DNA of 64,000 bases, taken from positions 12,958,001-13,022,000 of the forward strand of contig NC_135808.1 of assembly GCF_964213995.1 (NCBI RefSeq), written 5' to 3'. A program made the translations under genes and the position numbers. Below are positions 7,437-40,612 of this stretch, in pieces. Source of the stretch: Mustelus asterias (lineage: Eukaryota). Position 1 is the first letter of the stretch, and every line of letters starts with the position of its first letter. The notes beneath the pieces are model-generated. The model did not search any database, was not told the DNA's origin, and was given only the letters and a program-made list of their open reading frames with translations.

Positions 7437-7516
7437 TCACTTGGCGGCAGTGCTCTCTGATGGAATCAGTTTTGCAATAGTGGTTATGCTGGATTTAATT
7501 ATGTTTCCTTCAGCTC
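7437..7516 (-). CDS. Exon 10 (terminal): GAEGNIIKSSITTIAKLIPSESTAAK*
   Basis: cttttgtctttctttag| strong acceptor, in-frame TGA at 7439-7437; AATAAA ~270 nt downstream. Confidence 0.65.
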
Positions 7517-9076
7517 CTAAAGAAAGACAAAAGTGAATTTAAAGGTAGGCAGGCTTATTTTATTCAAACATGCAAAAATGTAAAATCAACACTTCTTCAT
7601 TTGAATTTGATTTGACCTTTTTTTTGAGTGAAGCATTAAATCAAGCTTTTCCTTTAATACATGAACCATTGAGTCATACAGCATAGAAATAGGCCCTTTG
7701 TCCCAACAAGTCTACGTTGACCATCAAACACCAATCTGTACTAATCCCATGCCTTGGCGATGTAAGTCCTTTTCCAGATCCTTCTTAAATGTTGTGTGAG
7801 TAGCTGCCTCCACCACCAGTTTAATTAGTCAAGACTTCTTCAGATACAGAAACAGAGGTTATACTGCTGCTGTACAGCGCCAGGGACCTGGGTTCAATTC
7901 CGGCCTTGGGTGACTGTGCGGAGTCGGCACGTTCTCCCCGTATCTGTGTGGGTTACCCCCCCAGGTGCTCCAGTTTGCTCCCACAGTTGAAAGATGTGCA
8001 GGTTAGGTGGATTGGCCTTGCTAAATTGCCCCCTTAGTATCCCAAGATGTGTAGCTTGGGGGGGATTGGCAGAGTAAGTGTGTGGGGCTGTGGGGATAGA
8101 GCAGGCGGTGGGCCTGGGTGAGATGCTCCGACTCTCTGACAGAGCATCCCACCCAGGCCCTATCCCCGTAACCCCATGGGCGGGATTTTCCAGCCATGCT
8201 CGCCCCAAAATCGGAAAATCCCACCTCAGGTCAATGGACCTTTCCATGGTCCGCTCCTCGCCCGCTACGATTCCCGTGGCGGGCGGAACAGGAAAATTCA
8301 TCCCTATGTACTTACCTCACTAATCTCCCTAACTTACACATCTTTGGTCACTAAGGGACAATTTAGTATGGCCAATCCACCTAACCCGCACATCTTTCGG
8401 ACTGTGGGAAGAAACCAGGGCACTCAGAAGAAACGCACGCAGACACAGGGCAAACGTGCAAACTGCACACCGACAGTCACCCAAGACCGGAATTGAACCT
8501 GGGTCCCTGGCGCTGTGAGGCAGCAGTACCAACCAATGTGCCACCACGCTGTCCTAAAATACAGGGGTCTTCTCCACTTATGGGGAGGCGATGGCCCAGT
8601 GGTATTAGTGCTGGACTATTAATCCAGAATCTTAGCTAATGTTCTGGAGACCTGCGTTTATATCCCACCACGGCAGATGGTAGAATTTGAATTCAATTTT
8701 AAAAATATCTGGAATTAAGAATCTACTGATGACCATGAAACTATTGTCGATTGTCAGAAAAACCCATCTGGTTCACTAATGTCCTTTAGGGAAGGAAATC
8801 TGCCATCCTTACCTGATCTGGCCTACATGTGACTCTAGAGCTACAGCAATGTGGCTGACTCTCAATTGAGCACGGGCAACTAGGGACGGGCAATAAATGC
8901 TGGCCAGCCAGTGATGGCCATGTCCCACAAATGAATAAAAAAAACTTCAAAACTGCAAAATGAAACAAAATCTTTCTATTCCCACCACAATGATGGCAGG
9001 GACATCCAATTATAGAAAGGGTCAGGGTGGCAGCTGTATTTCTGACAAAGTACTTGTATTTGGTTCCAATACTTAC

Positions 9077-9163
9077 CACTATGTTGACACTCATCAGAAC
9101 TTTTTACGCTTGTGTAGGTATTTGCAGATGGAGTTCCACTTGTCCGTCTTTTCCAATCTATGT
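9077..9163 (-). CDS. Exon 9: cytoplasmic tail (HIDWKRRTSGTPSANTYTSVKSSDECQHS)
   Basis: ctttgcgtcaacag| ... |gtaagt; 87 bp, phase 1-1; basic KRR juxtamembrane patch, YTSV motif. Confidence 0.75.
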
Positions 9164-10246
9164 CTGTTGACGCAAAGGTGCAATGAATTATATTGATACA
9201 AAAATGAATTGGACAAAGATTTTCAGTAACTGGATGATCAGAATCAGTCCGTAGGTTTTTGCCTCAGGACACCTTGGAGTGGATTTTATATTCTCCGATT
9301 GCGTGATGTGAAGGATGAGGGGAAGCATATAAACTCCCTTGGGGGCATTACCCACCAAATGCCCCTGCCCACGCCACAACTGTACGGATGTCAGTGCAGC
9401 TGTTGGGTCGTCCACCCTTGAACCAATTGAGAATATGGGCAATGGTGGCACAGTGGTAGTGTCACTTGACTGATAATCCAGAGGCCCTAGCTGGGACATG
9501 GGTTCAAATCCCATCACAGCAAGTGGTGGAACTTAAATTCAACTCATTGATAAATCTGGAGTTAAAGACAAGTCCGAGTGATACTGACCATAAAAACTAT
9601 CATTGATTGTCGTAAAAAACAGTCTGGCTCACAAATGTCCTTTTGTGTTGTTTAGAAAAAAGAGACACAACTCTGTCATAGCTTTTTGTCTTGCACTCAG
9701 AGGGACAAATGCCAGAATACCAAATTTCAAAGGGAACGACAAATTCATAGGAGACGCAGTGGCCTAGTGGTATTGTCACTGAATTAGTAGGATCAAGGCA
9801 GATGGTGAAACTTGAATATAATAAAAATCTGGAATAAAAAGTCTAATGATGGCCATAAAACCATTGTCAATTGGTCTAAAAGCCCATTTAATTCACTAAT
9901 GTCCTTTATCAGACCCACATGTGACTCCAGATCCACAGCAACCCGACCTCAACCACTCCTTGTTGCAAAGTCCTCCCTGCTTCAATAGTTCACATAAAAT
10001 TCATAGAAATCCTAAAGTGCAGGAGGAGGCCGTTCAGCCCATCAAGTCTGCACTGACAACAATCCCACCTAGGCCCTATCCCTGTAACCCCATAGATTTG
10101 CCCTGCTAATCCCTCTAACCTACGCATCCTGGGTCACTAAGGGGAACCAATGCACCTAACCTGCACACCCTTGGACAGTGGGAGGAAACCGGAGCACCCG
10201 GAGGAAACCCACGCAGATACGGGGAGTATGTGCAAACTTCATACAG

Positions 10247-10600
10247 TAAGAAGTTTAACAACACCAGGTTAAAGTCCAACAGGTTTATTTGGTAGCAAAA
10301 GCCACACAAGCTTTCGAGGCTCTAAGCCCCTTCTTCAGGTGAGTGGGAATTCTGTTCACAAACAGAATTTATAAAGACACAGACTCAATTTACATGAATA
10401 ATGGTTGGAATGCGAATACTTACAACTAATCCAGTCTTTAAGAAACAAAACAATGGGAGTGGAGAGAGCATCAAGACAGGCTAAAAAGATGTGTATTGTC
10501 TCCAGACAAGACAGCCAGTGAAACTCTGCAGGTCCACGCAACTGTGGGAGTTACAAATATTGTGACATGAACCCAATATCCCGGTTGAGGCCGTCCTTGT
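10247..10600 (-). mobile_element. Penelope-like element 3' end/pLTR (GIY-YIG C-terminus GLNRDIGFMS; hammerhead core CTGAAGA...GAAA)
   Basis: Translation of minus strand near 10560-10595; other copies at 35363-35572, 37240-37413, 40040-40188, 41218-41293, 59762-60260. Confidence 0.8.
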
Positions 10601-12789
10601 GTGAAACTCCATACAGACAGTGACCCGAGCCGGGAATCGAACCTAGGTCCCTGGAGCTGTGAGGCAGCAGTGCTAACCACTGTGCCGCATCTCACCCTTG
10701 CGATGATTTTAAAGCGATGAGTTATCACAAACTCCCTATTGTTGCCCATTCACTACCAAAACCAATTTGAAAAACCTCTGAGCCTTCAATGTTCCAGTAG
10801 AAATAACCCCAGTAATTCCAGTCTCTCCCTGTGCTCCCATACATCCTTCTGACATGTACGAATCCCAGGCGTGGGATCCCCAAGTATGGATCAGATTGAA
10901 ACCAATACGTCACACACCAAAATTTACTGTCAGACTTAATTCCAGCCTTAATGTTTTCCTGGACAACAGAGCAGAGGAAACTTGAAGGTTCAGCAGGGTT
11001 CCGAAACAGCTTTCACACAAGAAAAGATGGCATGTTTAGGATTGTTCAGTAAGTGCTGTCCAATCATGGAGTCACATCTAATGTTGGACGCTATGTTCTG
11101 AATGTTGCAAGAACAGGCTGGAGCTCAATTAATCAAATCTCAACATCATGCTTAGTACAGAAGGACAGGGGATGGTTCCTCTGGGTGCAGTGGCCCTTAT
11201 CCTGCAATGCAACAGGACTCCTTAACACCTGGTCATTTACAAATGGAAATTGATAGTATGAATAAAAGCAAAATACTGCAGATGCCAGAAATCTGAAATA
11301 TAAAGGGAAAACACTAGAAAAACACAACAGGTCTGGCACCATCTGTGGAGAGAGAAACATTTTGAGTCCAAATGATTCCATCAGAGCTTTCACTGCCTTC
11401 TCCCTTCTTCCTCAGGCTTTTTTGCCAGACTGGCTGAGTTTTCCCAACATTCTCTGTTTGCATTAATGACAGTCTGATCATTTGACATGTTAACATATAT
11501 CCCCCCACATGTTTACTTTCAGTGACTGGTGTACAAGGACACCCAAGTTCTGTTAAATGTTCCCCTCTCTCAATCTATAGCCATTCTAATGAGTTCAGCC
11601 CAAAACGGGATGGATTTGTTCAAACTATTACTGTTGTCAATTTAAGGCAAGATGTTATCTTTATCATTTAAGTTTTTAAAGTTTATTTATTAGTGCCACA
11701 AGTAGGCTTACATTAACACTGCAATGAAGCTACTGTGAAAATCCCCTAGTCGCCACACTCCGTTGCCAGTTCAGGTACACGGAGGGAGAATTGAGCATGG
11801 CAATGCACCTGACCAGCACATCTTTCAGACTGTGGGAGGAGACCGGAGTACCCGGAGGAAACCCACGCAGACACGGGGAGAACGTGCGGACGCCGCAAGA
11901 CAGTGACCCAAGCCGGGAATCAAACTCTGCCACTGTGGAAGATGAACTCCTAATCATGTGGGATGTAGAGGATGCTTACTCGGAGACCAGCGGCACTGTG
12001 TCGTTAACAAAATAGAACCAAGAAATGCAAAATGAATAAAGAACATTGATAAAGATTCTCCAATTCAGTGTTCCTGACACAAGCCAGGCAATTTCAGTAA
12101 ATTTCACACTCTCAGCTCATCATTGCATTTAATGAAAATGTACAGAGCTGGAGGTTTGAGAATTTATTATTTGTTATTAGTGTCACAAGTAGACTTACAT
12201 TGATGCTGCAATGAAGTTACTGTGAAAATCCCCTAGTCGCCACACTCCGGTGCCTGTTTGGGGACACTGAGGGAGAATTTAGCATGGCCAATGCATCTAA
12301 CCAGCACGTCTTTCGGGAATTGAACCCAGGTCCTTCGCGCAGTGAGGCAGCAGTGCCAAGCACTGTGCCACCGTGACACCCAAAACCACGTGGGAATGGA
12401 CTGATCCTCTCAAAGTCCATTCCATTCTTGAAATGCAATGAAGTTACTACGAAAACCCCCTAGTTGCCACACTCTGGCACCTGTTCGGGTACACTGAGGG
12501 AGAATTTAGCATGGCCAATGCACCTAACCAGCATGTCTTTCGAACTGTGGGAGGAGACCAGATCACCCGGAGGAAACCCACACAGACACGGGGAGAATGT
12601 GCAGACTCCACACAAAGGGAATCGAACCAGGGTCCCTGGTGCTCTGAGGCAGCAGTGCTAACTATTGTGCCATGTTTCCTAGCTGTTCATCATGAGTAAC
12701 TGAAGTGAAAAACCCATTCAAGGTTTCTGCTCACAGGACCGTGAGTCCTTTATAATAGATTTTAAACAACATCTGTTATCATTGCTTAC

Positions 12790-12891
12790 GTATTTTGTAG
12801 AGCTGAAAGGTTGCACCAAGAATAACCAATGTCAATACCACAGCAGGGATTATCGTTGGCCATAAGTAGGCTGCTGGTTCACATTCTTCAC
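12790..12891 (-). CDS. Exon 8: extracellular loop Cys + TM5 (GEECEPAAYLWPTIIPAVVLTLVILGATFQLYKI)
   Basis: ccctctgttgccag| ... |gtaagc; 102 bp, phase 1-1. Confidence 0.85.
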
Positions 12892-14917
12892 CTGGCAACA
12901 GAGGGATAAATAGCTGAAATGTAGTTTTAATGAACAGATTGGGTGGGAAAATAATGCAATCCATTCACAACAAGTGTAATAAATGGGTGCAATACATAAG
13001 TCATTAGAAAAATTAAATGTACCCACATTAGCATTTATTAGTATCACAAGTAGGCTTACATTAACACTGCGATGAAGTTACTGTGAAAATCCCCTAGTCG
13101 CCACACTGTTCTGGTGCACTGAGGGAGAGTTTAGCACGGCCAATCTACCCAACCAGCACGTCTTTCGGACTGTGGGAGGAAACCGGAACACCCAGAGGAA
13201 ACCCATGCAGGCACGGGGAGAACGTGCAAACTCCACACAGACCCAAGCTGGGAATTGAACCTGGGTCCCTGGTGCAGAGAGGTAGCAGTGCTAACCACTG
13301 TGCCACCGTGCTGCCCACTTAGATAATTGCCACGAAAAATCCTTGGCTCACAATTTTCAGCTTGTCTCATGAGTTATGTTCGATGTGACAATTATAATCA
13401 GGCAATTGAGGTTGGTCTGCTTGAATATTAACTCCCTGATTAAGGGCCAAATTGTTGGTCCAGTCAGGGAGCCCCATGCTTTGTACTCAAACAGGAGTGT
13501 CGCTTCCTCTGGCACTCCAGAGGTAGACTGCATACTGAGAGCAATCTGTATAGTGTTGTTGGATCTTGTAAATAAAGGACTTTTGATGAAGGGATTTCCA
13601 CCTCCGAGGACTTATTACAGTCAATTTGATATTTTTTATATCTCTTTCATTATTATGAAATACCAGGATATTCCCTATTAGCACTCCTGACACTCCCAAC
13701 TCAGGAAATGGTGTGGCTTTAGATTGTGATTTTTATTAACTGGCAACATGAAAGTTCGCAAGGTCACACGCAGGGTGGCAAAAGTATTAAAGCTGCCAAT
13801 CCCAGCCAGCATGTTCATCAGATATTCACCTGCCAGAGCAACTCGTAAGTTCGAAAGATTCCAGAGATTTTAAAGAGTTTGATAGAATGAATAAGAAAAC
13901 CAGCTCCTTTGGGAAACGTAGCTTACCAACTCTCAAAAAAGCCACTCAAGAATGAAAAAAAAGGATGAGCAGAAATGTTTTTACAAATGATCATGAAACA
14001 ACTGGGAATACTTTGCCACAGGGTAAGGCTGAGACATAAACTATTGCATCTCAATGGAAAATTGAGTAAACATTTGAAGGCGAGGCCAAAACATTGTGCG
14101 ATTTCAAGCAGAAATTAGATATAGCTCTTGAGGGAGATGAGGGAGTCCAAAGCTAGGGGTCATAGTTTGAGGTTATGTAAACCTTTTAGGACTGAGGTGA
14201 GGAGAAATTTATTCACCCAGAGGGTGGTGAATGTGTGGAATTCACTACCACAGAAAGTAGTTGAGGCCAAAACGTTGTGTGATTTCAAGAAGAAATTAGA
14301 TATAACTCTTGGGGGTAAAGGGATCAAGGCTTGGGTTGTTTTCTCTGCAGCAGAGGAGATTGAGGAACAACCTGATTGAGGTGTTCAAGATTATGAGGGG
14401 CATGGACAGGGTGGATAGGGAGCAGCTGTTCCGTTTAGTTGAAGGGTCAGTTACGAGGGGACATAAGTTAAAAGTGAGAAGTGGGAGATTTAGGGGGGAT
14501 TTGAAGAAAACCTGTTTTACAGAATGTACCGCAGAAAGTCGTTGAGGCCAAAATGTTGTGAGATTACAAGAAGAAATTAGATATAGCTCTTGGGGCCAAA
14601 GGGATCAAGGGATATGAGGGAAGGTGGGATCAGGGAATTTGATGATCAGCCATAATCATAATGAATGGTGGATCAGGCTTGAAGGGCTGAATGGTCTACT
14701 CCAGCTTCTATCTTCAATGTTTTTCTGAAGCAGGCAGAAAAGGCCACGAGGAGCAAAGGTAATTGCGTTAGATTTGAATTGGTTGAGCAATGATTTGGTG
14801 GCATGGTAAACTTAATAGCTCGATGGATTCCCATGAAACTGTGGCAAAATTGACCGAGCTCTCTCAATCGCTGTTAAATTCATCAATTCAATTCTGAAAG
14901 TATCATTGAACACTCAC

Positions 14918-15013
14918 CAGCTTGTTTCATCACTTCTCCAATCAGGATACTCGACACACATATCCCGATGATCCCACCCACTGGAGCTGCTAAACCAAAA
15001 ATGACACGGCAGC
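14918..15013 (-). CDS. Exon 7: TM4 (RCRVIFGLAAPVGGIIGICVSSILIGEVMKQA)
   Basis: tgatttgttcccag| ... |gtgagt; 96 bp, phase 1-1. Confidence 0.83.
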
Positions 15014-17296
15014 CTGGGAACAAATCAAACAGGAGAAGCTTGACCAGGACACGAATCCCCATCTCCCAAAAGGAAAAAGAAACTTTAAACTTGGAAACAA
15101 GAGGATACCAGATAAACTTGTTCAAATTTGTCTTGAGAACTTTAAAATGGAACTATAGTATTAACGGTACTGATTTTTAAAATGGGATTTAACAATTTTG
15201 CACTGGCTTTTCCTTCCGTCTGCCTCCAGCTGTGTTGCTGGGAAATGCAACTGATCGGGAAAAATTTTAAGGGGCATCTTGACAAATACATGAATAGGAT
15301 GGGAATAGAGGGATATGGTCCCCGGAGGGGGAGGGGGTTTTAGTTCAGTCAGGAAACATGGTCGGTATAGGCTTGGAGAGCCGAAGGGTCTGTCCCGGGG
15401 CTGTAATTTTCTTTGTTCTTTGTATTGATCATTCAGCTGCAATGAATACGGGAAAATCGGGTGGAGAAGGCTGTGTGCCTCTGAGACAGACCATGTGATT
15501 CGCCAGACAGAAAATAAGGTGAGCTCTCTCTCTTCCTCATTCTCCTCTATTTGCTGTGTCCCAGTGATCAACTAATCCTAACGAGAGGAACGTGAAACAC
15601 AAAGTTAGGAAGGAGACCCGAGGTCCAAGCCCCATTTCAGTGTCTTGAGCATACAGTCAGCTCAGTGAAGTACTGAGGGAGTGTGCGACACTGTTGGGGG
15701 TGCTATCTTTAGGATAATGGGCGGGATTTTGCAGTCTTACTCATCCTGAAACCGTAAAATCCCGACGAGGTCAACAGACCTTTCCAATGTCCACTCCTCA
15801 CCCGCTCCGATTCCCATGGCGGGCGGGACAGGAAAATCATAGAATCATAGAATTCTACAGTGCAGAAGAAGGCCATTTGGCCCATCGAGTCTGCACCGAC
15901 CACAATCCCACCCAGACCCTATCCCCATAACCCCATGCATTTATCCTAGCTAGTCCCCCTGGCACGGCCAGTCCACTTAACCCGCACATCTTTGTACTGT
16001 GGGAGGAAACTGGAGCACCCGGAGGAAACCCACGCAGACACGGGGAGAACGTGCAAACTCCACACAGACATTGACTGAGGCCGGAATCGAACCCGGGGAT
16101 CCCTGGCGCTGTGAGGCAGCAGTGCTAACCACTGTGACATCGTGCTGCCCCAAAATTCCAGCCAAGATGTTCAACTGAGGTCTCTTACTCCCACTCAGAT
16201 GAATGTATCACGTTATTTTAAGGCCAATATTGACCTCTAAAATATGACCCAGTCATCCACCTCATTGATGCTTGTTGGACCATTTTATATCTAATTTGGC
16301 TACTGTGGTCTCCTACTTTAAACAATGATTGTTCTTTAAAAAGGTCACCCTTGGTTGTGAAGTGCCTGATGTTGTGAAAGTGCTTTTAAGAATGCAAGTT
16401 GGTTCATCCAACTCAGTGGACAGCACTATCAGTCTAATCCAACAGTGATAGAAGATAATTACTCAACATAGAATCCCTACAGTGCAGAAGGAGGCCATTT
16501 GCCCATTGAGCTGGCACTGACTCTCTGACAGAGTATCGTACCCAGGCTCTCTCCCCACCCTATCTCTGTTAGACAACACAATTAACATCTAACCCACACA
16601 TCCTGGACACTAGGGGCAATTTAGCATGGCCAATCCACCTAACCCCCACATCTTTGGAGTATGGGAGGAAACTCCCGCAGACACATGGAGAACGTGCAGA
16701 CTCCACACAGACAGTGACCCAAGGCCGGAATTGAACCCAGGTCCCTGGCGCTGTGAGGCAGTTGTGCTAACCACTGTGCCACTGCACATCAATATACCAC
16801 ATCTCATTCACAAACCATGCCCTAACACATTAAATCCAGTCAAATTATCATAGAATCATAGAATCCCGACAGTCAGAAGGAGGCCATTTGGCCCATCGAG
16901 CCTGCACCAACAACAATCCCACCCAGGCCCAATCCCCATAATCATGGTATTTACCATGCCATTAAGGGGCAATTTAGCATGGCCAATCAACCTACCCGCA
17001 CATCTTTGGATTACAGCAATAGAATGGGACAAAGGAAACAGTTTGCTCAATGACAAGGCCATAAAGGTCTCCAGCAACACATCATTTGCTTTGGGAGGCA
17101 CAGTGGCCAACTGCATATCAATGGCAGGGCTTAAAGAGAAAGCATTAAAATGAGAGTTGACTCACAGGATGAGATTAATGGGACTCTTTAAAAGAAGCAG
17201 AGATTGCAAAGTGAAAGTTTAATTAAGGGTCTTAATATCAGGAAAGATTTTGATAGGAATGATATTCATAATAATACAACTGTTATCTGAACTTAC

Positions 17297-17416
17297 GTTT
17301 GGTCGACAAGATCTTATGCAACGTCTCACAGGTCACCATATTAAAGGCAAAATATATGGTTATTATTAGATGCACGAATAAAAGCACTAACAGAATCATA
17401 GCGCTTCCAGAAGGTC
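17297..17416 (-). CDS. Exon 6: TM3 (GPSGSAMILLVLLFVHLIITIYFAFNMVTCETLHKILSTK)
   Basis: ttgttcttttcttag| ... |gtaagt; 120 bp, phase 1-1; not in ORF track (too short). Confidence 0.85.
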
Positions 17417-18409
17417 CTAAGAAAAGAACAAAAGGTGAATAAAATTACACACATTCATTAGCTAAAAAAGGAATACAAATGAAAACTACATATTCCTTCA
17501 TGTAATTCTTCATTGATAGACTCATATATGTTTACAAGCAGATATGGCATCATTTGACCCATTAGATCCATGTCAGTATTTTGCAAGAGTAATTCTAAAT
17601 TAAGTCTCACTGCTTCACCGTCTCCCCATTTTTATCTAAAGTCTCACTGCCTCAGGGAAAAGGGCACTTCACCAGCTTTGAGTTCCCCTCAAAGTCCCGC
17701 AACTTTCTGACTGGAAATATATCACCATTCATTCATAGGGGAGGCAATGGCCAAGTGGCATTATCACCAGACTATTAATCCAGAAACTCAGCTATTGCCC
17801 TGGTGACCTGTGTTCAAATCCTGCCATGGCAGATGGTGAAATTTGAATTCAATAAAAAATATCTGGAATTAAGAACCTATTAATGACCATTGTCGGGAAA
17901 ACCCATCTGGTTCACTCATGTCCTTTTGGGAAGGAAGTCTGCCGTCCTTACCTGGTCTGGCCTACATGTGACTCCAGAGCCACAGCAATGTGGTTGACTC
18001 TCAATTGAGCTCAGGCAGCTAGGGATGGGCAATAAATGTTGGCCACCCAATGACGCCCATGTTCTAAGAATGAATAAATTTTTAAAAATTACATTCACGA
18101 TCACCGCAACTTCCCGCCTACCAGTCTTGTCAGAGTCCTTTCACCTCATGAACTGCAGTGGTTCAAGAAGGCAGCTCACCGCCACCTTCACATGGACAAT
18201 TAGGGCAATAAACGCTGGCCTAGCCAGCAACACTCACATCTCATGAATGAATTAGAAAGAACAAGTGCTCCGTGTGACAGAGTAATCTGTGTGCAAACAC
18301 TCAACATCAAGAAATTCTTGCTGTCTTCTCTCCACGCTCATTAGCAAGTATAAAGAGGTAACCTTCAGACTGATGACTGTTATTGACTCTCCTATTTGCA
18401 CTGTTCTCC

Positions 18410-19020
18410 ATGAGATGAAGTGGAAGTGTTTGAGAGCTTCATGTTTCTAGGTGTTCAGATCACTAACAATCTGCCCTGGTCCCTCCACGCCGACGCTACA
18501 GTTAAGAAAGCCCACCAACGCCTCCACTTTTTCAGGAGGCTAAGGAGGTTTGGCATGCCCGCTACAACTCTCACTAATATTTACAGATACACCATAGAAA
18601 GCATTCTTTCTGGCTGTATCACAGCTTGGTATGGCTCTTGCTCACCCCAAGACCGCAAGAAACTACAAAAGGTCGTGAATGTAGCCCAATCCATCACTCA
18701 AACCAGCCTCCCATCCATTGAATCTGTCTACACTTCCTGCTGCCTTGGCAAAGCAGCCAGCATAATTAAGGACCTCATGCACCCTGGACGTTCTCTCTTC
18801 CACCTTTTTCCATCGGGAAAAAAATACAAAATTCTGAGATCATGTACCAACCGACTCAAGAACAGCTTCTTCCCTGCTGCAGTCAGACTTTTGAATGGAT
18901 CTACCTTGCACTAAGTTGATCTTCCTCTACACCCTAGCTGTGACTGTAACACTACATTCTGCACTCTCTCCTTTCCTTCTCTATGAACGGTATGCTTTGT
19001 CTGTATAGTGCACAAGAAAC
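18410..19020 (+). mobile_element. Rex1/Babar-type LINE 3' fragment (further copies ~605-840, 3150-3720, 4615-4985, 5825-6660, 25860-26360, 55510-56540, 57910-58470)
   Basis: ESILSGCITAWYGSCS...HPGRSLFHLFPSGK...RLKNSFFPAAVRLLN C-terminus; other copies end in (aaatc)n tails. Confidence 0.85.
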
Positions 19021-20022
19021 AAAGAACAAAGAACAATACAGCACAGGAACAGGCCCTTCGGCCCTCCAAGCCCGCGCCGCTCCCTGGTCCAAACTAGACC
19101 ATTCTTTTGTATCCCATTCCCACTCCGTTCATATGGCTGTCTAGATAAGTCTTAAACGTTCCCAGTGTGTCCGCCTCCACCACCTTGCCTGGCAGCGCAT
19201 TCCAGGCCCCCACCACCCTCTGTGTAAAATACGTCCTTCTGATATCTGTGTTGAACATTGTTCCCCTCACCTTGAACCTGTGACCCCTTGTGTTCGTCAC
19301 CTCCGACCGGGGAAAAAGCTTCCCACTGTTCACCCTATCTATGCCTTTTATAATTTTATACACCTCTATTAAGTCTCCCCTCATCCTCCGTCTTTCCAGG
19401 GAGAACAACCCCAGTTTACCCAATCTCTCCTCATAACTAAGCCCCTCCATACCAGGCAACATCCTGGTAAACCTCCTCTGTACTCTCTCCAAAGCCTCCA
19501 CGTCCTTCTGGTAGTGTGGCGACCAGAACTGGACGCAGTATTCCAAATGCGGCCGAACCAACGTTCTATACATCTGCAACATCAGACCCCAACTTTTATA
19601 CTCTATGCCCCGTCCTATAAAGGCAAGCATGCCATATGCCTTCTTCACCACCTTCTCCACCTGTGACGTCACCTTCAAGGATCTGTGGACTTGCACACCC
19701 AGGTCCCTCTGCGTATCTACACCCTTTATGGTTCTGCCATTTATTGTATAGCTCCTCCCTACATTATTTCTACCAAAATGCATCACTTCGCATTTATCAG
19801 GATTGAACTCCATCTGCCATTTCTTTGCCCAAATTTCCAGCCTATCTATATCCTTCTGTAGCTTCTGACAATGCTCCTCACTATCTGCAAGTCCTGCCAA
19901 TTTTGTGTCGTCCGCAAACTTACTGATCACCCCAGTTACACCTTCTTCCAGATCATTTATATAAATCACAAACAGCAGAGGTCCCAATACAGAGCCCTGC
20001 GGAACACCACTAGTCACAGGCT
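19020..20022 (-). mobile_element. CR1 3' fragment inserted at the end of a Rex1/Babar copy
   Basis: ORF 19094..20017 with RT motifs. Confidence 0.92.
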
Positions 20023-22124
20023 TCCATCAGACTTTTGAATGAACGGTATGCTTTGTCTCTATAGCACGCAAGAAATAATACTTTTCACTGTATGCTAATT
20101 CATGTGGCAATAATAAATCAAATCAAATGTCACTTTCAGAAATGATTTGCTCATCATAACTTTATCATTGGACACTCACCAGTCTGTCCCAATACTTCAG
20201 CAAACAGAAAAGGCGTTGCAATGATATCTGCCACCGACGATACGATATTGAAAATTTCACGGCACACTGTGAATGAATAAAGCATTGGTCACACACGTAC
20301 ATGCACAAACCCTGACCTGTCTGTCTCCAAGAGTGCCTCTGGAGAATGCAACTGGTCAAGAATTAGTATTAGGGAGATTTCTTATTCCTGCACTTGTGAT
20401 TATTGAGTCAATCCTGTGTAATGAGTACAGGAGTCTTTAAGTGTATTTATTATGTCACAAGTAGGCTTACATTAACACTGCAATGAAGTTATTGTGAAAA
20501 TCCCCTAGTCGCCACACTCGGGTGCCTGTTCGGGTACACTGAGGGAGAATTCAGCATGGCCAATGCACCCTAACCAGCACGCCTTTCAGACTGCAGGAGG
20601 AAACCGGAGCACCTGATGGAAACCCACGCAGACATGGGGAGAATGTGTAGACTCCACACAGTCACCCAAGCAGGGAATCGAACCCGGTCCCTTGCGCTGT
20701 CAGGCAGCAGTGCTAACCACTGTGCCACCCAAAACCGTGTGGGGAGGGGCAGCTCCTCTGAGAGACCATTCTTGAAATGGAATTCTCGAATATACTTCAA
20801 TTCATGGATAGAAAATGAGGTGGCCTCCCTCGGGGATGTGCAGTGCTCTCCACCTGCTGGATCCAGCTGATCAGTTAATAGCAGGATGGAGAAAGAATGA
20901 CTACAACATTGGCTTTAAAGAGCAATTGTGGCTGAGAGTTAAGCATGCTGGGATATTTGGTCAAGCTATAATCAAGCACAGGTGCAAGCTGCAAAGTTAC
21001 TGAGAGCTGTGATCTGGTCTGTGAGCTGTGTTGACCAAATAAGAATAGTTGTTTGAACTAAGATTGACCCAACAGAGCCATGCCCGTATATGGGTTGAGG
21101 CAATGTGACCAACATGCCATTTAAACAAAGTTTTCTATCAATAACTCCATTGGCCTAGTTGGACAATGTGACCAGTTTCCGGTTACAGCTTTGTCTGGGT
21201 GCCAGAGAACTTCAGGTTGGGGCAGTTTGGAGATAAAAGAGACATTTCAGCCTTTTGTCTTCAGCGATAACTCAGATCAACCATGGCAAGAGTGCCCTGA
21301 AGAACATCTTCAGAGAAGGACCATGAGGATGGAATCTTAACTGGGGACAGACCTGGCCATTTTGTTCTAAATTGGATAGCATCTATTTTCAGTTAATGAA
21401 TTGGAGTTAATGTTCAGTTAAAGTTAATGTTCAGTAGAAGAGTTCAAGTGTTGCAACTGTCGTACGTTTGAGTTTGGTATCAAAAGTATTAAATTTTAAG
21501 TGAATCTGAGTCAACTCCTGTCGATTGGTTTGTCATATTTAACTGAGTGTTTGGAAAGAGCTGAAGCTAGGAGCCGAATAAGAAAGATTAACCCAAAGGT
21601 CATAGGTTCAAGCTTCATTTCAGAGACTTGAGAACGCCATCTAGACCAGCAGTTCAGTGCAGTATAGGGATTATTGCAGTGTCCGCTGTCATTTAGATTA
21701 GATGTTTAATTAGGGTCTCTCGTTTCCCTCTGAGATGAAGGTAAAAAGATCCCAACCTGATCAAAGGGAATTCCCAAAGCAGTTGGATTTGTTCACCAAA
21801 ATGATAGGTTTCATAGTCTTTGTCTGGTGCTAACACACCACCTGGCAAATTTATCCAATTCAAATCCAGGTGGTCATGGTGAGGTTAGAATTCACAACCT
21901 CTTGAGTTCTTAGCGTCGTACGTTGTTACTACACTGGAATATTTTCGACTGGATTTTTACACTCTGTTGCTGGTAGGTTTGAAGACATGGGGGTGGGGGG
22001 GGAGGGGGTTTTCAAAAAGCAATGCATGGTCTGCCCACAACCCACCCGTCAAGTCCTTAAGTGGCCCCTAAGGGCCTCACTCTGCCCCTGTCACTATTTA
22101 ACCCACAGCAGGAGGTGAACATAC

Positions 22125-22229
22125 CTTCAGTCTGCATCCAACACACACACGCAATGAAAAGAAAGAGAAATGAAAGCACTGGGGCAAACTCCAGGAAATG
22201 TTGCATCTTCTCTCGAACGAACTGGAACC
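22125..22229 (-). CDS. Exon 5: TM2 (RFQFVREKMQHFLEFAPVLSFLFLFIACVCWMQTE)
   Basis: cttattttctcag| ... |gtatgt; 105 bp, phase 1-1. Confidence 0.82.
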
Positions 22230-22261
22230 CTGAGAAAATAAGCAAATTGCTATCAACAATA

Positions 22262-22825
22262 TAATACATAAAACCTTGGTTAGGCTGTATTTAGAGTATT
22301 GAGTGCAGTTCTGGTCGCCACACTGCCAGAAGGACATGGAAGGTATGGAGAATGCAAAGAAGAATGTTGCCTGGTCTCGAGGGCATTGAATAGAAGGAGA
22401 GGTTGAATAAACTGGGATTGTTTTCACTGGAAAAAGGGAGGCTGAGGTGAGACCTGATAGAGGTCTACAAAATTATGAGAGGCAGAGACAGGGTGGATAG
22501 TCAGAAGTTTTTTCCCAGGGTGGAAGTGTCAATTACAAGGGGGCACACGTTCAAGGCGAGAGGGGGAAAGTTTAAGGGAGATGCGCGGGGGAAGTTTTTC
22601 ATGCAGAGAGTGGTGGATGCCTGGAAAGCGCTGCCAGAGGAGGTGGTGGAAGCAGGCACATGAGCAACATTTAAGAAGCATCTGGATGGATACATGAATA
22701 GGGAGGGAATAGAGGGATACGGACTAAGGACAGAAGGTTTCTTTTTTAGTTTAGTTAGGGCATCATGAAAGACACGGGCTTGGAGGGCCGAAGGATCTGT
22801 CCCTGTGCTGTACCTTTCTTTGTAA
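22262..22825 (+). mobile_element. CR1 3' fragment in the TM1-TM2 intron
   Basis: Degenerate RT C-terminus and 3' tail. Confidence 0.8.
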
Positions 22826-22977
22826 TACTTAAGCAGAAATTATTCATACAATAAAAGTAATCATGCTGAAAGTCGAGGTCCAAAATTTAATATTTAAAAG
22901 TTTCACAGGATTTCTAATATTAAACCGTAAGATTTAACTTTTTAATATAAAACTGTGCAAAGAACAATTTCTCTTAC

Positions 22978-23109
22978 TTTCTTTGCAGTATTTACTCCAG
23001 CATTGGGCTTTACTCAAAAAGGTTATAACAGCAGTTAACAGTGTGGCAACAGCAGTCACAAACGCAGCGATGGAAAATGCCACAGTGCTGTAGTGTATAT
23101 ATGCAAGAC
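22978..23109 (-). CDS. Exon 4: TM1 (GLAYIHYSTVAFSIAAFVTAVATLLTAVITFLSKAQCWSKYCKE)
   Basis: atttctatttcag| ... |gtaaga; 132 bp, phase 1-1, long hydrophobic run followed by basic residues. Confidence 0.87.
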
Positions 23110-24292
23110 CTGAAATAGAAATATTGTTTTTGTTACACTTTTAGCCAAACCAGATTGCAAAATGTAAACAGGGACATTTTGCCCCTCATAAACGTACCAA
23201 TTGAAGTCTGCTGTGTTAAACATTAATACACCTCCTGCGTTAGTAGCAAGGTCCTCCACGTGCTAGTTATCATATACAGATAGAATTAATAGCGATCAAG
23301 TATACAAAATCATTCTGAACAATTAAACAGGCCTGAGAATAAGACAAACATCATGTGAATACAGTAACATTACATAGTGTAGCCCGAGTACATTTCACCT
23401 TCTTCAAACCTGGGCTAAACTTCCTATCCCATAAGCCTATCACTAAAATTGTCTTCCCTCTTTCTCCACACCATTGCCCAACTCAACCCTAACGCCAGAC
23501 CAACTGAAACTCTTATGAATCTCTTAACCTACTTGCTGCATCACCCACGGAAAACACTTGTTGCAAACTTACTTACGACAGCATTTATAAAATTCCAACT
23601 GCTTAGCCTTTCACCCTCTATTCAGTACAACATATCTGGAGCTACTGATTTGACCAACTGCACCCTCATCTCCACGTTTGATGTCCTAGCCCCCAGTCAA
23701 ACCAATACTGTCTCTCACCCTGGCTGCTCACCCAATGTGGCTCGCATCTCTGCTCCCTTACAAATCCGAGGTATGCAGACTTGATCGGGTATGGTGGACT
23801 TCTGGCTTATCCATTCACTGCCAGATCTGCCTGGACCACGTAAAGTGCTGTCATCTCATTCCCATTCCAAAATCACCAGGAATGCAACTTTGACCATTGC
23901 CTGCTACAGTGGTTAGCGCTGCTGCCTCACAGCACCAGGGACCCAGGTTCAATTCCGGCCTCGGGTCACTGTCTGTGTGGAGTCTGCACGTTCTCCCCGT
24001 GTCGGCGTGGGTTTTCTCCGGGTGCTCCAGTTTCCTCCCACATTCCAAAAGATGTGCGGGTTAGGTAGCAAATTGCCCCTTAGTGTCAGGGAGATTAGCA
24101 GGGTAAATACGTGGGATTAAGGGGATAGGCCCTGGGTGGGATTGATGTCGCTGTAGACTTAATGGGCCGATTGGCCTCCTTCTGTACTGGAGGGATTCTG
24201 TGATTCTACTATTCTCTATTGTAAAACATCACTTAAAGGCCTCATTCTTCTCTCCTCCACCCTCACTTCATTTTCACCTGAAACAGATACAT

Positions 24293-24819: not shown

Positions 24820-25732
24820 AATGGAGGTGTAGTGGACAGTGAGGAAGGTTTTCAAAGCTTGCAGAGGGATTTGGACCAGCTAGAAAAATGGGCTGAAAAA
24901 TGGCAGATGGAGTTTAATGCAGACAAGTGTGAGGTATTGCACTTTGGAAGGACAAACCAAGGTAGAACATACAAGGTAAATGGTAGGACACTGAAGAGTG
25001 CAGTAGAACAGAGGGATCTGGGAATACAGATATGTAATTCCCTCAAAGTGGCGTCACAGGTAGATAGGGTCGTAAAGATGGTTTTGGTACATTGGCCTTT
25101 ATAAATCAAAGTATTGAGCATAGGAGTTGGAATGTTATGGTGAGATTGTATAAGACATTGGTGAGGCCGAATTTAGAGTATTGTGTGCAGTTTTGGTCAC
25201 CTAATTACAGGAAGGATATTAATAAGGTTGAAAGAGTGCAGGGAAGGTTTACAAGGATGTTGCCGGGACTTGAGAAACTGAGTTACAGAGAAAGGTTGAA
25301 TAGGTTAGGACTTTATTCCCTGGAGTGTAGAAGAATGAGGGGAGATTTGATAGAGGTGTATAAAATTATGATGGGTATAGATAGAATGAATGCAAGCAGG
25401 CTTTTTCCACTGAGGCTAGGGGAGAAAATAACTAGAGGACATGGGTTAAGGGTGAGGGGGGAAAAGTTTAAAGGGAATATTAGGGGGGGGCTTCTTCACA
25501 CAGAGAGTGGTGGGAGTGTGGAATGAGCTGCCAGATGAAGTGGTGAATGCGGGCTCACTTTTAACATTTAAGAAAAACTTGGACAACTACATGGATGAGA
25601 GGGGTGTGGAGGGATATGGTCCAGGTGCAAGTCAGTGGGACTAGGCACAAAAATGGTTCGGCACAGGCAAGAAGGGCCAAAAGGCCTGTTTCTGTGCTGT
25701 AATGTTCTATGGTTCTATGTATGGTTCTAATG
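24820..25732 (+). mobile_element. CR1 3' fragment
   Basis: ORFs 24760-25526, ttctatg tail. Confidence 0.9.
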
Positions 25733-26457
25733 TTAAAGGTTGAATGCAAGGGATGTCACTGAAATATTATTTTTCAATCGGAAAGTAACTATCTGGATAA
25801 ACCCAGCAGGTCTGGCAGCATCTGAGGAGAGAGAAGCACTGTTAACATTTTGAATCCATCGACCAAGACTCTCACCAACTTTTACAGATGCACCATAGAA
25901 AGCATTCTTTCTGGTTGTATCACAGCTTGGGATGGCTCCTGCTCTGCCCAAGACTGCAAGAAACTACAAAGGTTGTGAATGTAGCCCAATCCATCACGCA
26001 AACCAGCCTCCCATCCATTGATTGTCTACACTTCCCGCTGCCTTGGCAAAGCAGCCAACATAATTAAGGACCCCACGCCACCCCGGACATTCTCTCTTCC
26101 ACCTTCTTCCTTCGGAAAAAAGATACACATACCAACTGACTCAAGAACAGCTTCTACCCTGTTGCCATCAGATTTTTGAATGGGCCTACCTTGCACTAAG
26201 TTGATCTTTCTCTACACCCTAGCTATAACACTACATTCTGCACTCTATCCTTTCCTTCTCTATGAACTGTATGCTTTGTCTGTATAGGATGGAAGAAACA
26301 ATACTTTTCACTTATACTAATACATGTGGCACTAATAAATCAAATCAAACCAAAATCAAATCAAAACTGTATTTTTGTCTCTCCTCATATGCTGCCAGAC
26401 CTGCTGAGTTCATCCAACATTTCCTGTTCTTGCAACTAAGTACCTGGGTTGACTCAC

Positions 26458-26727
26458 CATGAATAATAAGAGCGTATGACTTGGTCCTCTTGCTAACAGG
26501 ATTCTCCATGATGCAAGTATAGTTCCCGCAGTTTGACTTGATGGCTCTGGAAATAATCAATGTGCTGTTGTTTTGCACTAGTTGATATTGTTGGCCATTC
26601 GTTATCACTTCGTCATCTTTCCACCACAGAGTGGAACTCGCTGTCCCTGCAGATACTCGACAGGTCAGTTCAATGGTGGTATCCATGCAGGTGGAATTGC
26701 CAACAATCGAAGGTTCAGGAAGTGCTT
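26458..26727 (-). CDS. Exon 3: IgC2 domain (CD2/SLAM/CEACAM-like)
   Basis: tttatctcttcag| acceptor; EALPEPSIVGNSTCMDTTIELTCRVSAG...WWKDD...NNSTLII...KSNCGNYTCIMENPVSK...LIIH; |gtgagt; 270 bp, phase 1-1; canonical C-W-C plus YxCxxxNPVS. Confidence 0.92.
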
Positions 26728-38219: not shown

Positions 38220-39840
38220 AGAGGCTGGGGGGCAAAAAAAGGCTGGAGGGAGGGGGGGGCAAAAAAAGGCTGGAGGGGGGGGCAAAAAAGGCTGGAGGGA
38301 GGAGGGGGGGCAAAAAAGGCTGGAGGGAGGGGGGGGGCAAAAAAAGGCGGGGGGGAGGGGGGGGCAAAAAAAGGCTGGAGGGGGGGGCAAAAAAGGCTGG
38401 AGGGAGGAGGGGGGGCAAAAAAGGCTGGAGGGAGGAGGGGGGGCAAAAAAGGCTGGAGGGAGGAGGGGGGGGCAAAAAAGGCTGGAGGGAGGAGGGGGGG
38501 GCAAAAAAGGCTGGAGGGAGGAGGGGGGGCAAAAAAGGCTGGAGGGAGGAGGGGGGGCAAAAAAGGCTGGAGGGAGGGGGGGGCAAAAAAAGCTGGAGGG
38601 AGGAGGTGGGGCAAAAAAAGCTGGAGGGAGGAGGGGGGGCAAAAAAAGCTGGAGGGAGGAGGGGGGGCAAAAAAAGCTGGAGGGAGGGGGGAGGCAAAAA
38701 AGGCTGGAGGGAGGAGGGGGGGCAAAAAAAGGCTGGAGGGAGGAGGGGGGCAAAAAAGGCTGGAGGGAGGAGGGGGGCAAAAAAAGGCTGGAGGGAGGAG
38801 GGGGGGGGGAAAGGCTGGAGGGAAGAGGGGGGGCAAAAAAAGCTGGAGGGAGGAGGGGGGCAAAAAAGGCTGGAGGGAGGAGGGGGGCAAAAAAAGGCTG
38901 GAGGGAGGAGGGGGGGCAAAAAAAGGCTGGAGGGAGGAGGAGGGGGGCAAAAAAAGGCTGGAGGGAGGAGGGGGGGCAAAAAAAGGCTGGAGGGAGGAGG
39001 GGGGGCAAAAAAAGGCTGGAGGGAGGAGGGGGGGAAAGGCTGGAGGGAGGAGGGGGGCAAAAAAAGCTGGAGGGAGGAGGGGGGCAAAAAAAGCTGGAGG
39101 GAGGAAGGGGGGCAAAAAAAGCTGGAGGGAGGAGGGGGGCAAAAAAAGCTGGAGGGAGGAGGGGGGGGCAAAAAAAGCTGGAGGGAGGAGGGGGGGGCAA
39201 AAAATGCTGGAGGGAGGAGGGGGGCAAAAAAGGCTGGAGGGAGGAGGGGGGGCAAAAAAAGGCTGGAGGGAGGAGGGGGGCAAAAAAGGCTGGAGGGAGG
39301 AGGGGGGCAAAAAAAGGCTGGAGGGAGGAGGGGGGGAAAGGCTGGAGGGAGGAGGGGGGGCAAAAAAAGCTGGAGGGAGGAGGGGGGCAAAAAAGGCTGG
39401 AGGGAGGAGGGGGGCAAAAAAAGGCTGGAGGGAGGAGGGGGGGGCAAAAAAAGGCTGGAAGGAGGAGGAGGGGGGGCAAAAAAAGGCTGGAGGGAGGAGG
39501 GGGGGCAAAAAAAGGCTGGAGGGAGGAGGGGGGGCAAAAAAAAGGCTGGAGGGAGGAGGGGGGCAAAAAAAGGCTGGAGGGAGGAGGGGGGGGCAAAAAA
39601 AGGCTGGAGGGAGGAGGGGGGGGCAAAAAAAGGCTGGAGGGAGGAGGGGGGGCAAAAAAAGGCTGGAGGGAGGGCAAAAAAGGCTGGAGGGAGAGGGGGG
39701 CAAAAGAAAAGCTGGGGGGGCAAAAAAAGGCTGGGGAGGGGGGTCAAAGAGGCTGGGGTGAGGGGGGTCAAAGCGGCTGGGGGGAGGGGGAAAAGAAGCT
39801 GGCGTGGGGGCAACGTTGCTGGAGGGAGGGGGCAAAGGGG
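38220..39840 (+). repeat. G/A-rich minisatellite, ~28-30 bp unit GGGGGGCAAAAAAAGGCTGGAGGGAGGA, >50 copies
   Basis: Direct reading; unit length varies in G and A homopolymer runs; explains the spurious 500-640 aa low-complexity ORFs. Confidence 0.97.
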
Positions 39841-40353
39841 TTAGGCAGGGTGTAAAGTGGTTAATGGAATCCATAGAATCCTGACAGTGCAGCAGGCCAT
39901 TCAGCCAATCGAGTCTGCACGACCACTATCCCACCCAGGCCCTATCCCCATTTACCCTGCTAATCCCCCAACACTGGGGCTAATTTCACATGGCCAATCC
40001 ACTTAAGCGGCACATCTTTGGACTGTGGGATGAAACCCAGTAAGAGTTTTAACAACACCAGGTTAAAGTCCAACAGGTTTATTTGGTAGCTTGGTATTTG
40101 CTACCAAATAAACCTGTTGGACTTTAACCTGGTGTTGCCAAAACTCCCACTGTGTTCACCCCAGTCCAACGCCGGCATCGCCACATCAGGACGAAACCCA
40201 CGCAGACATGGGGAGAATGTGCAAGCTCCACACAATCACCCGAGGCAGGAATGGAACCCGGGTCCCTGGTGCTGTGAGGCAGCAGTGCTAACCACTGTGC
40301 CACACCTTTAAGCGGTAATTTAGTGAAGGAACATGAAGCAAAGTCTGAGCAAT

Positions 40354-40371
40354 GAAAAGAAAGCGAAACTG
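40354..40371 (+). promoter_or_regulatory. ISRE consensus GAAAGCGAAACT in intron 1
   Basis: Matches GAAANNGAAACT, with an additional upstream GAAA. Confidence 0.45.
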
Positions 40372-40545
40372 CGCCATTTGCAGAGAGGAGGACTGAAATC
40401 CCTGGGAGTGTCTGTAGTGGCTCTAATATCCCTGTGCAGGGGGAGAGGGAATGTGACCCACTCCCTGGAGTCGGCTCCCATTCATTCCCCGTTGTGCGGG
40501 AATTGCCTCTCACCCTGTTTCCCCCCTCTCCCTCCCCCTCCTCAC

Positions 40546-40612
40546 CTTCTGCCCCGCCGGCCCGGAGCTGGAAGAGGACGGGCAGCAACAGGAGTGGGAA
40601 TCGCTGCTCCAT
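40546..40612 (-). CDS. Exon 1 (signal peptide MEQRFPLLLLPVLFQLRAGGAE) of Ig-superfamily 5-TM gene
   Basis: ATG at 40612, hydrophobic leader of 22 codons +1 nt, then GAAG|GTGAGG donor (phase 1); lies in a CpG-rich non-repeat island. Confidence 0.85.

What the first reader, a model, noticed from the sequence alone, without database searches (positions are those of the whole stretch)
7437..40612. Hidden 11-exon gene: CD2/SLAM-like Ig ectodomain fused to a CD47-like five-pass membrane domain
Seen: eleven minus-strand exons in unique islands, each with a pyrimidine-AG acceptor and/or GT donor. All introns are phase 1 and the exons splice into one stop-free 1671-nt CDS: SP-V-V-C2-TM1-TM2-TM3-TM4-TM5-tail. 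The loops obey the positive-inside rule: K/R-rich after TM1, TM3 and TM5; acidic or neutral (QTEGPSGS, EVMKQAGEECEP) outside. Established: CD2/SLAM/CEACAM proteins have a Cys-less V plus C2 ectodomain but a single TM or GPI anchor, and CD47 (with its poxviral homologues) is the textbook Ig + 5-TM protein but has one V domain. Inference: this is either a chimeric or ancestral CD47-related receptor class in cartilaginous fish, or an independent Ig-5TM invention. It could be a SIRP-type 'self' marker or a decoy. The ORF track shows only fragments of it.
Basis: partly seen in the sequence, partly recalled or inferred. Interest (0 to 1): 0.93.

Follow-up and report, generated by a model that had tools for sequence, protein, structure and literature searches.

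The report
Shark Ig protein, five-pass anchor
This is a real shark gene, already in the public annotation but unnamed, for a cell-surface immunoglobulin-type protein held in the membrane by five helices; it belongs to a large shark-and-ray gene family that I could not find described in print.

Summary
All eleven exons are real. Each has AG/GT borders, phase 1 and no stop. They lie in order inside two RefSeq proteins of Mustelus asterias LOC144496861, an 'uncharacterized protein' of 585 and 483 aa. So the gene is not hidden.

The layout holds: signal peptide, V(-V), C2, five hydrophobic helices, short tail, with positive-inside loops.

It is one gene of a family. 81 of 199 fetched proteins carry the same membrane module. 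Those whose names I looked up come from 12 shark and 6 ray/skate species.

The ectodomain is of the CD2/SLAM/CEACAM type.

The membrane module shows no sequence relation to CD47. No CD47 membrane family matched 22 modules at E<=10, and no solved chain matched. It shares CD47's layout, including a conserved Cys in the TM4-TM5 loop and an odd Cys in the adjacent Ig domain. Their co-variation is not significant.

A fold comparison and RNA reads could not be obtained. Eight paper searches found no description. The scan noted a likely paralogue 372 kb away (s1-892298).

The parts
40546..40612 (-). Exon 1: ATG and signal peptide (67 nt, ends in phase 1, donor GTGAGG)
   Evidence: residues 1-22 of P0004/P0151
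36522..36827 (-). Exon 2: V domain 1, no Cys (306 nt, phase 1-1); used in both RefSeq isoforms
   Evidence: Pfam V-set 3.1e-08, 34.2 bits against cut-off 26
32599..32904 (-). Exon 3: V domain 2, a tandem copy of exon 2 (11 of 306 nt differ; 5 synonymous, 6 not); in isoform X1 only
   Evidence: Pfam V-set 3.6e-09; repeat period 3923
26458..26727 (-). Exon 4: C2/I-set domain with four Cys (270 nt, phase 1-1)
   Evidence: Pfam I-set 2.8e-12
22978..23109 (-). Exon 5: linker, helix 1 and the K/R-rich start of inner loop 1 (132 nt)
22125..22229 (-). Exon 6: rest of inner loop 1 and helix 2, ending in the family's CW..E motif (105 nt)
20180..20266 (-).
17297..17416 (-). Exon 8: helix 3 and K/R-rich inner loop 2 (120 nt)
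14918..15013 (-). Exon 9: helix 4 and the start of outer loop 2 (96 nt)
12790..12891 (-). Exon 10: outer loop 2 with the conserved Cys (ECEP), then helix 5 (102 nt)
9077..9163 (-). Exon 11: cytoplasmic segment (87 nt), conserved W-K/R-...-TGTPS motif
7437..7516 (-). Exon 12: last 25 codons and the TGA stop. The annotated frame is not the one that orthologues use; AATAAA lies 270 nt after the stop

Best explanation
This is gene LOC144496861 of the starry smooth-hound, Mustelus asterias: twelve minus-strand exons spread over 33 kb of repeat-rich DNA. It encodes a membrane glycoprotein with these parts: a signal peptide; one or two Cys-less V domains (a recently duplicated exon, of which the shorter isoform keeps only one copy); a C2 domain; five membrane helices, each on its own phase-1 exon; and a short cytoplasmic tail without tyrosine signalling motifs. 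The loop charges put the Ig head outside and the tail inside. In this orthologue group an extra 87-nt exon lengthens the first outer loop. The gene belongs to a clustered multigene family found in sharks and in rays/skates. My most likely mechanism is as follows. The V domain binds a partner on another cell, as CD2/SLAM/CEACAM heads do. The five helices form one bundle. The membrane-proximal C2 domain is tied to the bundle's TM4-TM5 loop by a disulfide that fixes the orientation of the head. Any signal then passes sideways to neighbouring membrane proteins rather than through the tail. In other words, it works like CD47. Shown: the exons, the reading frame, the family, the hydrophobic segments, the loop charges and the conserved Cys positions. 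Inferred: the topology, the helix bundle, the disulfide, the binding and the signalling route.
For: Splice borders, phases and open frames for all 12 exons. The two RefSeq proteins map back onto exactly these exons. V-set and I-set matches were found exon by exon. A profile of the membrane module finds 81 of 199 fetched proteins. The named ones come from 18 elasmobranch species, including models from a second annotation effort (the scyTo_ and chiPu_ names). The membrane exons are 59-67% identical to the Carcharodon and Scyliorhinus orthologues. Of 17 distinct members scanned, 14 give five hydrophobic 19-residue segments beyond the signal peptide; two give fewer and this gene's product gives six. 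Inner loops hold 4-6 K/R; outer loops are acidic (sequences). The Cys in outer loop 2 is present in 42 of 54 full modules. The extra C2 Cys is never present without it: 34 have both, 12 neither, 7 the loop Cys only, 0 the C2 Cys only. Tails have a median of 44 aa; 0 of 54 hold an ITAM, 0 of 54 an ITSM and 1 of 54 an ITIM-like motif. CD47's features are taken from passages of PMC8410850 and PMC7206415.
Against: No structure model could be made. RefSeq and the other models are predictions. On a tree, the Cys co-variation is not significant (4 supported independent pairs, median p 0.5). A crude hydropathy scan calls six segments in this species, because the extra exon scores 1.74-1.78. The last exon is read out of the orthologues' frame, and that frame carries two stops here. 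Between paralogues the Ig head (60-62%) is better conserved than the membrane part (34-48%). That pattern fits a conserved ligand better than an arms race.
Confidence: 0.7

Rival explanations
1. The five-helix module shares ancestry with CD47's. The family would then be a sister or ancestral form of CD47 that kept a CD2-type V domain on top of the membrane-proximal Ig domain.
For: The order of parts is the same: an Ig domain directly before five helices, then a short motif-less tail. A conserved Cys sits in the same loop (TM4-TM5) that carries CD47's C245 (PMC8410850 passages). A nearly invariant Gly lies at the outer start of helix 3, where CD47 has its conserved G191. There are sub-threshold V-set_CD47 (PF08204) matches on the C2 domain in 4 of 10 members (E 0.0018-0.09). 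From recall, not from a call: CD47 also encodes each helix on its own exon.
Against: No CD47 membrane-region family was among the matches of 10 full proteins (E<=1) or of 22 isolated modules (E<=10). A module profile matched no solved chain at E<=10, although the paper reports a deposited full-length CD47, 7MYZ. The Atlas feature search from P0019 listed only ordinary Ig clusters. The PF08204 scores are no better than those of several other Ig families on the same domain.
Confidence: 0.3
2. The module is an independent invention: an elasmobranch-specific five-helix domain added to a CD2/CEACAM-type receptor, convergent with CD47.
For: No sequence relative outside elasmobranchs turned up in any search. 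The exons are all phase 1-1, so they could be added one at a time. One such addition is visible: exon 7 is present in one orthologue group only, and it scores against a helix-4 profile above all or nearly all shuffles in 2 of 6 orthologues (0 and 1 of 200 shuffles reach the real score).
Against: The searches were seeded with shark sequences, capped at 150 rows or limited by shared words, so absence elsewhere is not shown. The parallels with CD47 listed above also count against it. In the other 4 of 6 orthologues exon 7 is not distinguishable from shuffles (11-140 of 200 reach the real score).
Confidence: 0.45
3. In this gene the extra exon is a sixth membrane helix, so the product is six-pass with its tail outside the cell.
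For: The segment IFNIVSSVADIIATPFLFA passes a 1.6 Kyte-Doolittle threshold in M. asterias (1.74).
Against: The same segment scores 1.06-1.49 in six orthologues and carries 2-6 charged residues. Family members without it keep the same loop charges. The K/R-rich loops after helices 3 and 5 would end up outside.
Confidence: 0.08
4. This is a gene-model artefact: a single-pass Ig receptor gene wrongly chained to unrelated downstream exons.
For: All the models are computational, and I could show no transcript.
Against: The same chain is predicted in 18 species by at least two annotation efforts. All exons are phase-compatible and open. The downstream exons have no start codon or signal peptide of their own. 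The rest of the window holds no other family gene, only transposon ORFs.
Confidence: 0.04
5. The M. asterias copy is decaying and no longer makes the ancestral protein.
For: Read in the orthologues' frame, the last exon gives their conserved C-terminus interrupted by two stops. The annotated frame gives 25 unrelated residues.
Against: The other eleven exons are intact and keep every family motif and Cys. A changed short tail need not abolish function. Both V copies are open.
Confidence: 0.12

Closest known systems
CD47 (integrin-associated protein) and poxviral CD47-like proteins
   Same: An Ig domain is followed directly by five membrane helices and a short tail without tyrosine motifs. A conserved Cys sits in the TM4-TM5 outer loop, and an unpaired Cys sits in the adjacent Ig domain. 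This is the arrangement that in CD47 forms the C15-C245 tether (PMC8410850, PMC7206415 passages).
   Different: The ectodomain has two or three Ig domains, not one. The distal V domain has no Cys at all, whereas CD47's IgV has the canonical disulfide. No sequence match to a CD47 membrane family or to any solved chain was found. It is a clustered multigene family, whereas PMC8410850 describes CD47 as a receptor without homologous family members.
CD2/SLAM family (CD2, CD48, 2B4)
   Same: A distal V-set domain without the canonical disulfide plus a membrane-proximal C2 domain with extra Cys. The Pfam Receptor_2B4 family scores above its cut-off in 3 of 10 relatives (27.7-31.2 bits against 21). 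NCBI names some relatives 'CD48 antigen-like' or 'CD2-like'.
   Different: Those proteins are single-pass or GPI-anchored, and SLAM members signal through ITSMs (recalled). Here there are five helices and 0 of 54 tails hold an ITSM. The window's own protein gives no 2B4 or SLAM match at E<=1.
CEACAM / CEA family
   Same: The best solved relatives of the full-length profile are CEA (1e07_A, 1.7e-48) and CEACAM1 (1.2e-30). CEACAMs also have an N-terminal V-like domain followed by C2-type domains (PMC8274849 figure legend).
   Different: CEACAMs are single-pass or GPI-anchored, with ITIM or ITAM-like tails (PMC8274849 figure legend; PMC3628338 abstract passage).

Membership tests
CD47 | A single N-terminal IgV domain with the canonical intradomain disulfide (PMC7206415 passage) | tested here: not met
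   The ectodomain is V(-V)-C2. The V exons encode no Cys at all.
CD47 | Five membrane-spanning helices after the Ig domain | tested here: met
   Of 17 distinct members scanned by hydropathy, 14 give five segments beyond the signal peptide. This gene gives five plus the marginal extra-exon segment. No dedicated topology predictor was on hand.
CD47 | Sequence match to the CD47 membrane-region family of Pfam (I recall it as PF04549; neither the accession nor the name appeared in any output) | tested here: not met
   No such family among the matches of 10 full proteins at E<=1 or of 22 isolated modules at E<=10. The library does hold the CD47 Ig family PF08204.
CD47 | Sequence similarity to solved full-length CD47 (7MYZ, PMC8410850) | tested here: not met
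   The module profile matched 0 chains at E<=10. I did not verify that the copy holds 7MYZ, and that chain carries a BRIL insert.
CD47 | A long-range disulfide between the Ig domain and the TM4-TM5 loop | tested here: inconclusive
   The loop Cys is present in 42 of 54 modules. The counts are 34 both, 12 neither, 7 loop Cys only, 0 C2 Cys only. The independent-pairs test is not significant.
CD47 | A short cytoplasmic tail without tyrosine motifs, varied by splicing | tested here: inconclusive
   Tails have a median of 44 aa, with no ITAM or ITSM in 54. Alternative tail splicing was not examined.
CD47 | The same fold of the five-helix bundle | not testable with these tools
CD2/SLAM | A distal V domain without the canonical disulfide plus a proximal C2 domain | tested here: met
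CD2/SLAM | A match to Pfam Receptor_2B4 or SLAM above the cut-off | tested here: inconclusive
   There is no match for the window's protein. Receptor_2B4 is above its cut-off in 3 of 10 relatives; SLAM is always below its cut-off.
CD2/SLAM | A single-pass or GPI anchor; ITSM tails in SLAM members (recalled) | tested here: not met
   Five helices; 0 of 54 tails hold an ITSM.
CEACAM | An N-terminal V-like domain plus C2-type domains | tested here: met
   The best solved relatives are CEA and CEACAM1.
CEACAM | A single-pass helix or GPI anchor with ITIM/ITAM-like tails (PMC8274849) | tested here: not met
CEACAM | Position next to the conserved CEACAM neighbour genes (PMC3628338) | not testable with these tools
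   The rest of the window holds only transposon ORFs.

The most novel reading that the evidence does not exclude
Sharks and rays carry a whole clustered family of immune-type Ig receptors built on a CD47-type five-helix bundle with the same Ig-to-loop disulfide. The family would be the surviving sister or ancestral form of CD47. In that case CD47's odd architecture arose from a CD2/CEACAM-like V-C2-5TM receptor by loss of the distal V domain, and CD47 is not the only five-pass receptor of the vertebrate immune system.
Probability: 0.3. Interest if true: 0.8.

Novelty: new variant of a known kind. Interest (0 to 1): 0.6.

Why it matters
[quoted passage not shown] This window holds one gene of a conserved shark-and-ray family with the same overall build but a different, CD2/CEACAM-type head. 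Database names for its members are scattered: 'uncharacterized', 'HEPACAM-like', 'CEACAM1-like', 'contactin-6-like', 'VEGFR2-like'. If the bundle proves related to CD47's, the family shows where CD47 came from. If not, it is a second, independent way of mounting an Ig head on a multi-helix base. Either outcome is testable with a structure prediction and a few cDNAs. An immune role is not shown.

Tried and rejected
Pfam scans of the six membrane exons one by one gave nothing useful: four had no match, and the best matches of the other two were DUF7708 at 0.067 and Zip at 0.12.

The word-indexed protein search reached only close relatives. It found 6 proteins with the P0004 membrane region, 3 with the module alignment and 37 with the full alignment. 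All were elasmobranch. It cannot show absence elsewhere.

The Atlas feature search from the stored homologue P0019 listed ordinary Ig clusters, with the best score at 0.91, probably its own cluster. It says nothing about the membrane part.

A scan of viral contigs for poxviral relatives could not start, because the module alignment has no stretch conserved enough.

I could not run a profile-profile comparison with CD47. No tool returned a CD47 sequence, and sequence from memory is not accepted.

I tested the idea that exon 7 is a copy of the helix-4 exon. Inside the window the match is weak (35% over 31 residues, E 0.039). Against a helix-4 profile, 0 and 1 of 200 shuffles reach the real score in 2 of 6 orthologues, and 11 to 140 of 200 do in the other four, including this gene at 30. 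I keep it only as a suggestion.

I rejected the idea of a fast-evolving V domain. V1 and V2 differ by 5 synonymous and 6 non-synonymous changes, and the paralogues' V domains are better conserved than their membrane parts.

I looked for synteny, but the window holds no other cellular gene.

Paper searches that found no description of the family. For most rows I saw only the listing. I read passages of PMC8410850, PMC7206415, PMC3628338 and PMC8274849. Supplements were closed. The supplementary species lists of PMC8410850 might show whether a cartilaginous-fish CD47 is known.
Full report
What is there. I read the minus strand between 7437 and 40612 exon by exon. Every acceptor is AG after a pyrimidine-rich run and every donor is GT. 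Each internal exon is a multiple of three, so all introns are phase 1, and no exon contains a stop. An AATAAA lies 270 nt after the stop.

The joined step. I searched them one at a time: Pfam, the window itself, and, with the V2 exon alone, the library of 1.84 billion representatives. That last search returned P0004, 483 aa, 94% identical to V2. P0004 is the public model of this very gene: XP_078073557.1, 'uncharacterized protein LOC144496861 isoform X2 [Mustelus asterias]'. A 585-aa isoform X1 (P0151) sits in the same cluster. Twelve exons give 1758 nt, which is 585 codons plus the stop. Dropping V2 gives 1452 nt, which is 483 codons plus the stop.

The domains. Each V exon matches the Pfam V-set family above its cut-off (3.1e-08 and 3.6e-09), and the C2 exon matches I-set (2.8e-12). 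The V domains contain no Cys; the C2 domain has four. V1 and V2 lie 3923 nt apart inside a duplicated stretch that is 90-96% identical. They differ at 11 of 306 nt, 5 synonymous and 6 not. This agrees with the scan's note s1-891480. A profile of 35 full-length relatives finds CEA and CEACAM1 as the best solved relatives (1.7e-48 and 1.2e-30). Pfam's 2B4 family is above its cut-off in 3 of 10 relatives, though not in this protein.

The membrane part. A 19-residue hydropathy scan finds five segments beyond the signal peptide in 14 of 17 distinct members examined. Two members give fewer. This gene's product gives six, the sixth being the extra exon at 1.74. That same stretch scores only 1.06-1.49 in six orthologues and carries 2-6 charged residues. 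I therefore read it as an insert in the first outer loop, not as a helix. The loops after helices 1, 3 and 5 hold 4-6 Lys/Arg, and the two other loops are acidic (sequences). That places the Ig head outside and the tail inside. The tail is short: the family median is 44 aa. Of 54 tails, 0 hold an ITAM, 0 an ITSM and 1 an ITIM-like motif.

A family, not a one-off. A profile of the membrane module finds it in 81 of the 199 proteins I had fetched by then. The names I looked up come from twelve sharks: Mustelus, Heptranchias, Hemiscyllium, two Scyliorhinus, Heterodontus, Cetorhinus, Rhincodon, Carcharodon, Chiloscyllium, Stegostoma and Pristiophorus. They also come from six rays or skates: Pristis, Hypanus, two Mobula, Hemitrygon and Amblyraja. 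Several genes sit on one chromosome or contig: at least three in M. asterias, six in Pristis and five in Hypanus. The scan's note s1-892298 describes a similar gene 372 kb from this window; I did not check it. The names are 'uncharacterized' or borrowed by similarity, such as HEPACAM-like, CEACAM1-like, CD48-like, contactin-6-like and VEGFR2-like. Some models (scyTo_, chiPu_) come from a different annotation effort from RefSeq's. The membrane exons are 59-67% identical to the Carcharodon and Scyliorhinus orthologues. The extra exon occurs only in this gene's orthologue group. No chimaera or bony vertebrate appeared among the hits. However, the searches started from shark sequences and were capped or limited by shared words, so absence elsewhere is not shown.

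Is it CD47-like? In layout, yes. According to passages of PMC7206415 and PMC8410850, CD47 has one IgV, five helices and short tails. It also has a disulfide from the Ig domain (C15) to C245 in the loop between helices 4 and 5, and a conserved Gly at the outer top of helix 3. In this family a Cys sits in the helix 4-5 loop in 42 of 54 full modules. An extra Cys sits in the C2 domain's D-C-G-x-Y-x-C motif. The C2 Cys is never present without the loop Cys: 34 have both, 12 neither, 7 the loop Cys only, 0 the C2 Cys only. Two of the seven are isoforms without a C2 domain. In members such as P0001 and P0020 these two are the only non-canonical Cys in the C2 domain and that loop, which argues for a pair. 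On a tree the co-variation rests on too few independent events to be significant (7 and 4 changes; median p 0.5). This partly tests the scan's note s1-891506. A Gly at the outer start of helix 3 is nearly invariant.

In sequence, no. No CD47 membrane-region family appeared among the Pfam matches of ten full proteins at E<=1 or of 22 isolated modules at E<=10. A module profile matched no solved chain at E<=10. The V-set_CD47 matches on the C2 domain (4 of 10) are below the cut-off and no better than those of other Ig families. The Pfam accession of the CD47 membrane family is from my recall, and I did not verify that the solved-structure copy holds 7MYZ.

Expression. I have no direct evidence. 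The run search with the C2 exon listed no holder on record as RNA. Two small runs of the same organism hold the exon completely but are of unknown kind. The case that the gene is real therefore rests on splice sites, open frames, conservation across 18 species and independent gene models.

An oddity at the 3' end. Read from its first base, the last exon encodes ELKET*LNPA*PLLQN*. That is the orthologues' conserved C-terminus (S. canicula ends ELKETRLNPGAPQLNN) with two stops and the same final stop. The annotated phase-1 frame gives 25 unrelated residues. So the tail of the M. asterias protein has left the ancestral frame. This could be a remodelled tail or the first sign of decay. The other eleven exons are intact.

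Verdict. This is a real, annotated but uncharacterized gene. It is one member of an elasmobranch-wide family that mounts a CD2/CEACAM-type Ig head on five membrane helices. It most likely works as CD47 does, with a head tethered to a helix bundle and signalling sideways. Membership in the CD47 family is not supported by sequence, and the fold remains untested. Eight full-text searches found no paper that describes the family.

Noticed in passing
window 7469-7516 (minus strand): Read in the other frame from its first base, the last exon gives the orthologues' conserved C-terminus with two in-frame stops (ELKET*LNPA*PLLQN*). The annotated frame is therefore not the ancestral one.
   Followed up: partly
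window 38227-39719: A 28-nt minisatellite of about 54 copies lies in intron 1. It produces 530-644-aa proline- or glycine-rich pseudo-ORFs in several frames on both strands.
   Followed up: no
window 41977-45960 (minus strand): An uninterrupted 1327-aa gag-pol ORF of a gypsy-type retroelement lies just upstream of the gene's first exon. The scan's note s1-891545 concerns its primer-binding site.
   Followed up: no
window 29567-31549 (+), 47750-49882 (+), 19094-20017 (-), 34451-35317 (-): These are long open reverse-transcriptase ORFs of LINE-type elements. Three of them lie inside introns of the gene. One LINE fragment begins right after the V1 donor site and continues the open frame.
   Followed up: no
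window 22978-23109 (minus strand): Exon 5 holds two further GTAA donors upstream of the used one, both also in phase 1. Using either would trim the K/R-rich inner loop without breaking the frame.
   Followed up: no
P0004, P0151, P0153-P0158, P0191 (relatives, not window coordinates): All 9 proteins with the extra 87-nt exon, which starts with a Cys, also have an extra Cys in the first strand of the C2 domain. Only 7 of 35 without the exon have it. This hints at a second Ig-to-loop link, but it is one orthologue group and so one event.
   Followed up: partly
relatives listed: The precomputed Pfam accessions PF28321 and PF28299 are attached to some family members but are absent from the Pfam copy I could scan. 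I do not know what they are. If one of them models the membrane module, the family is already catalogued there.
   Followed up: no
same genome, 372 kb before the window: The scan's note s1-892298 describes a similar V+C2+five-helix gene. RefSeq lists LOC144496849 and LOC144497485 on the same chromosome.
   Followed up: no
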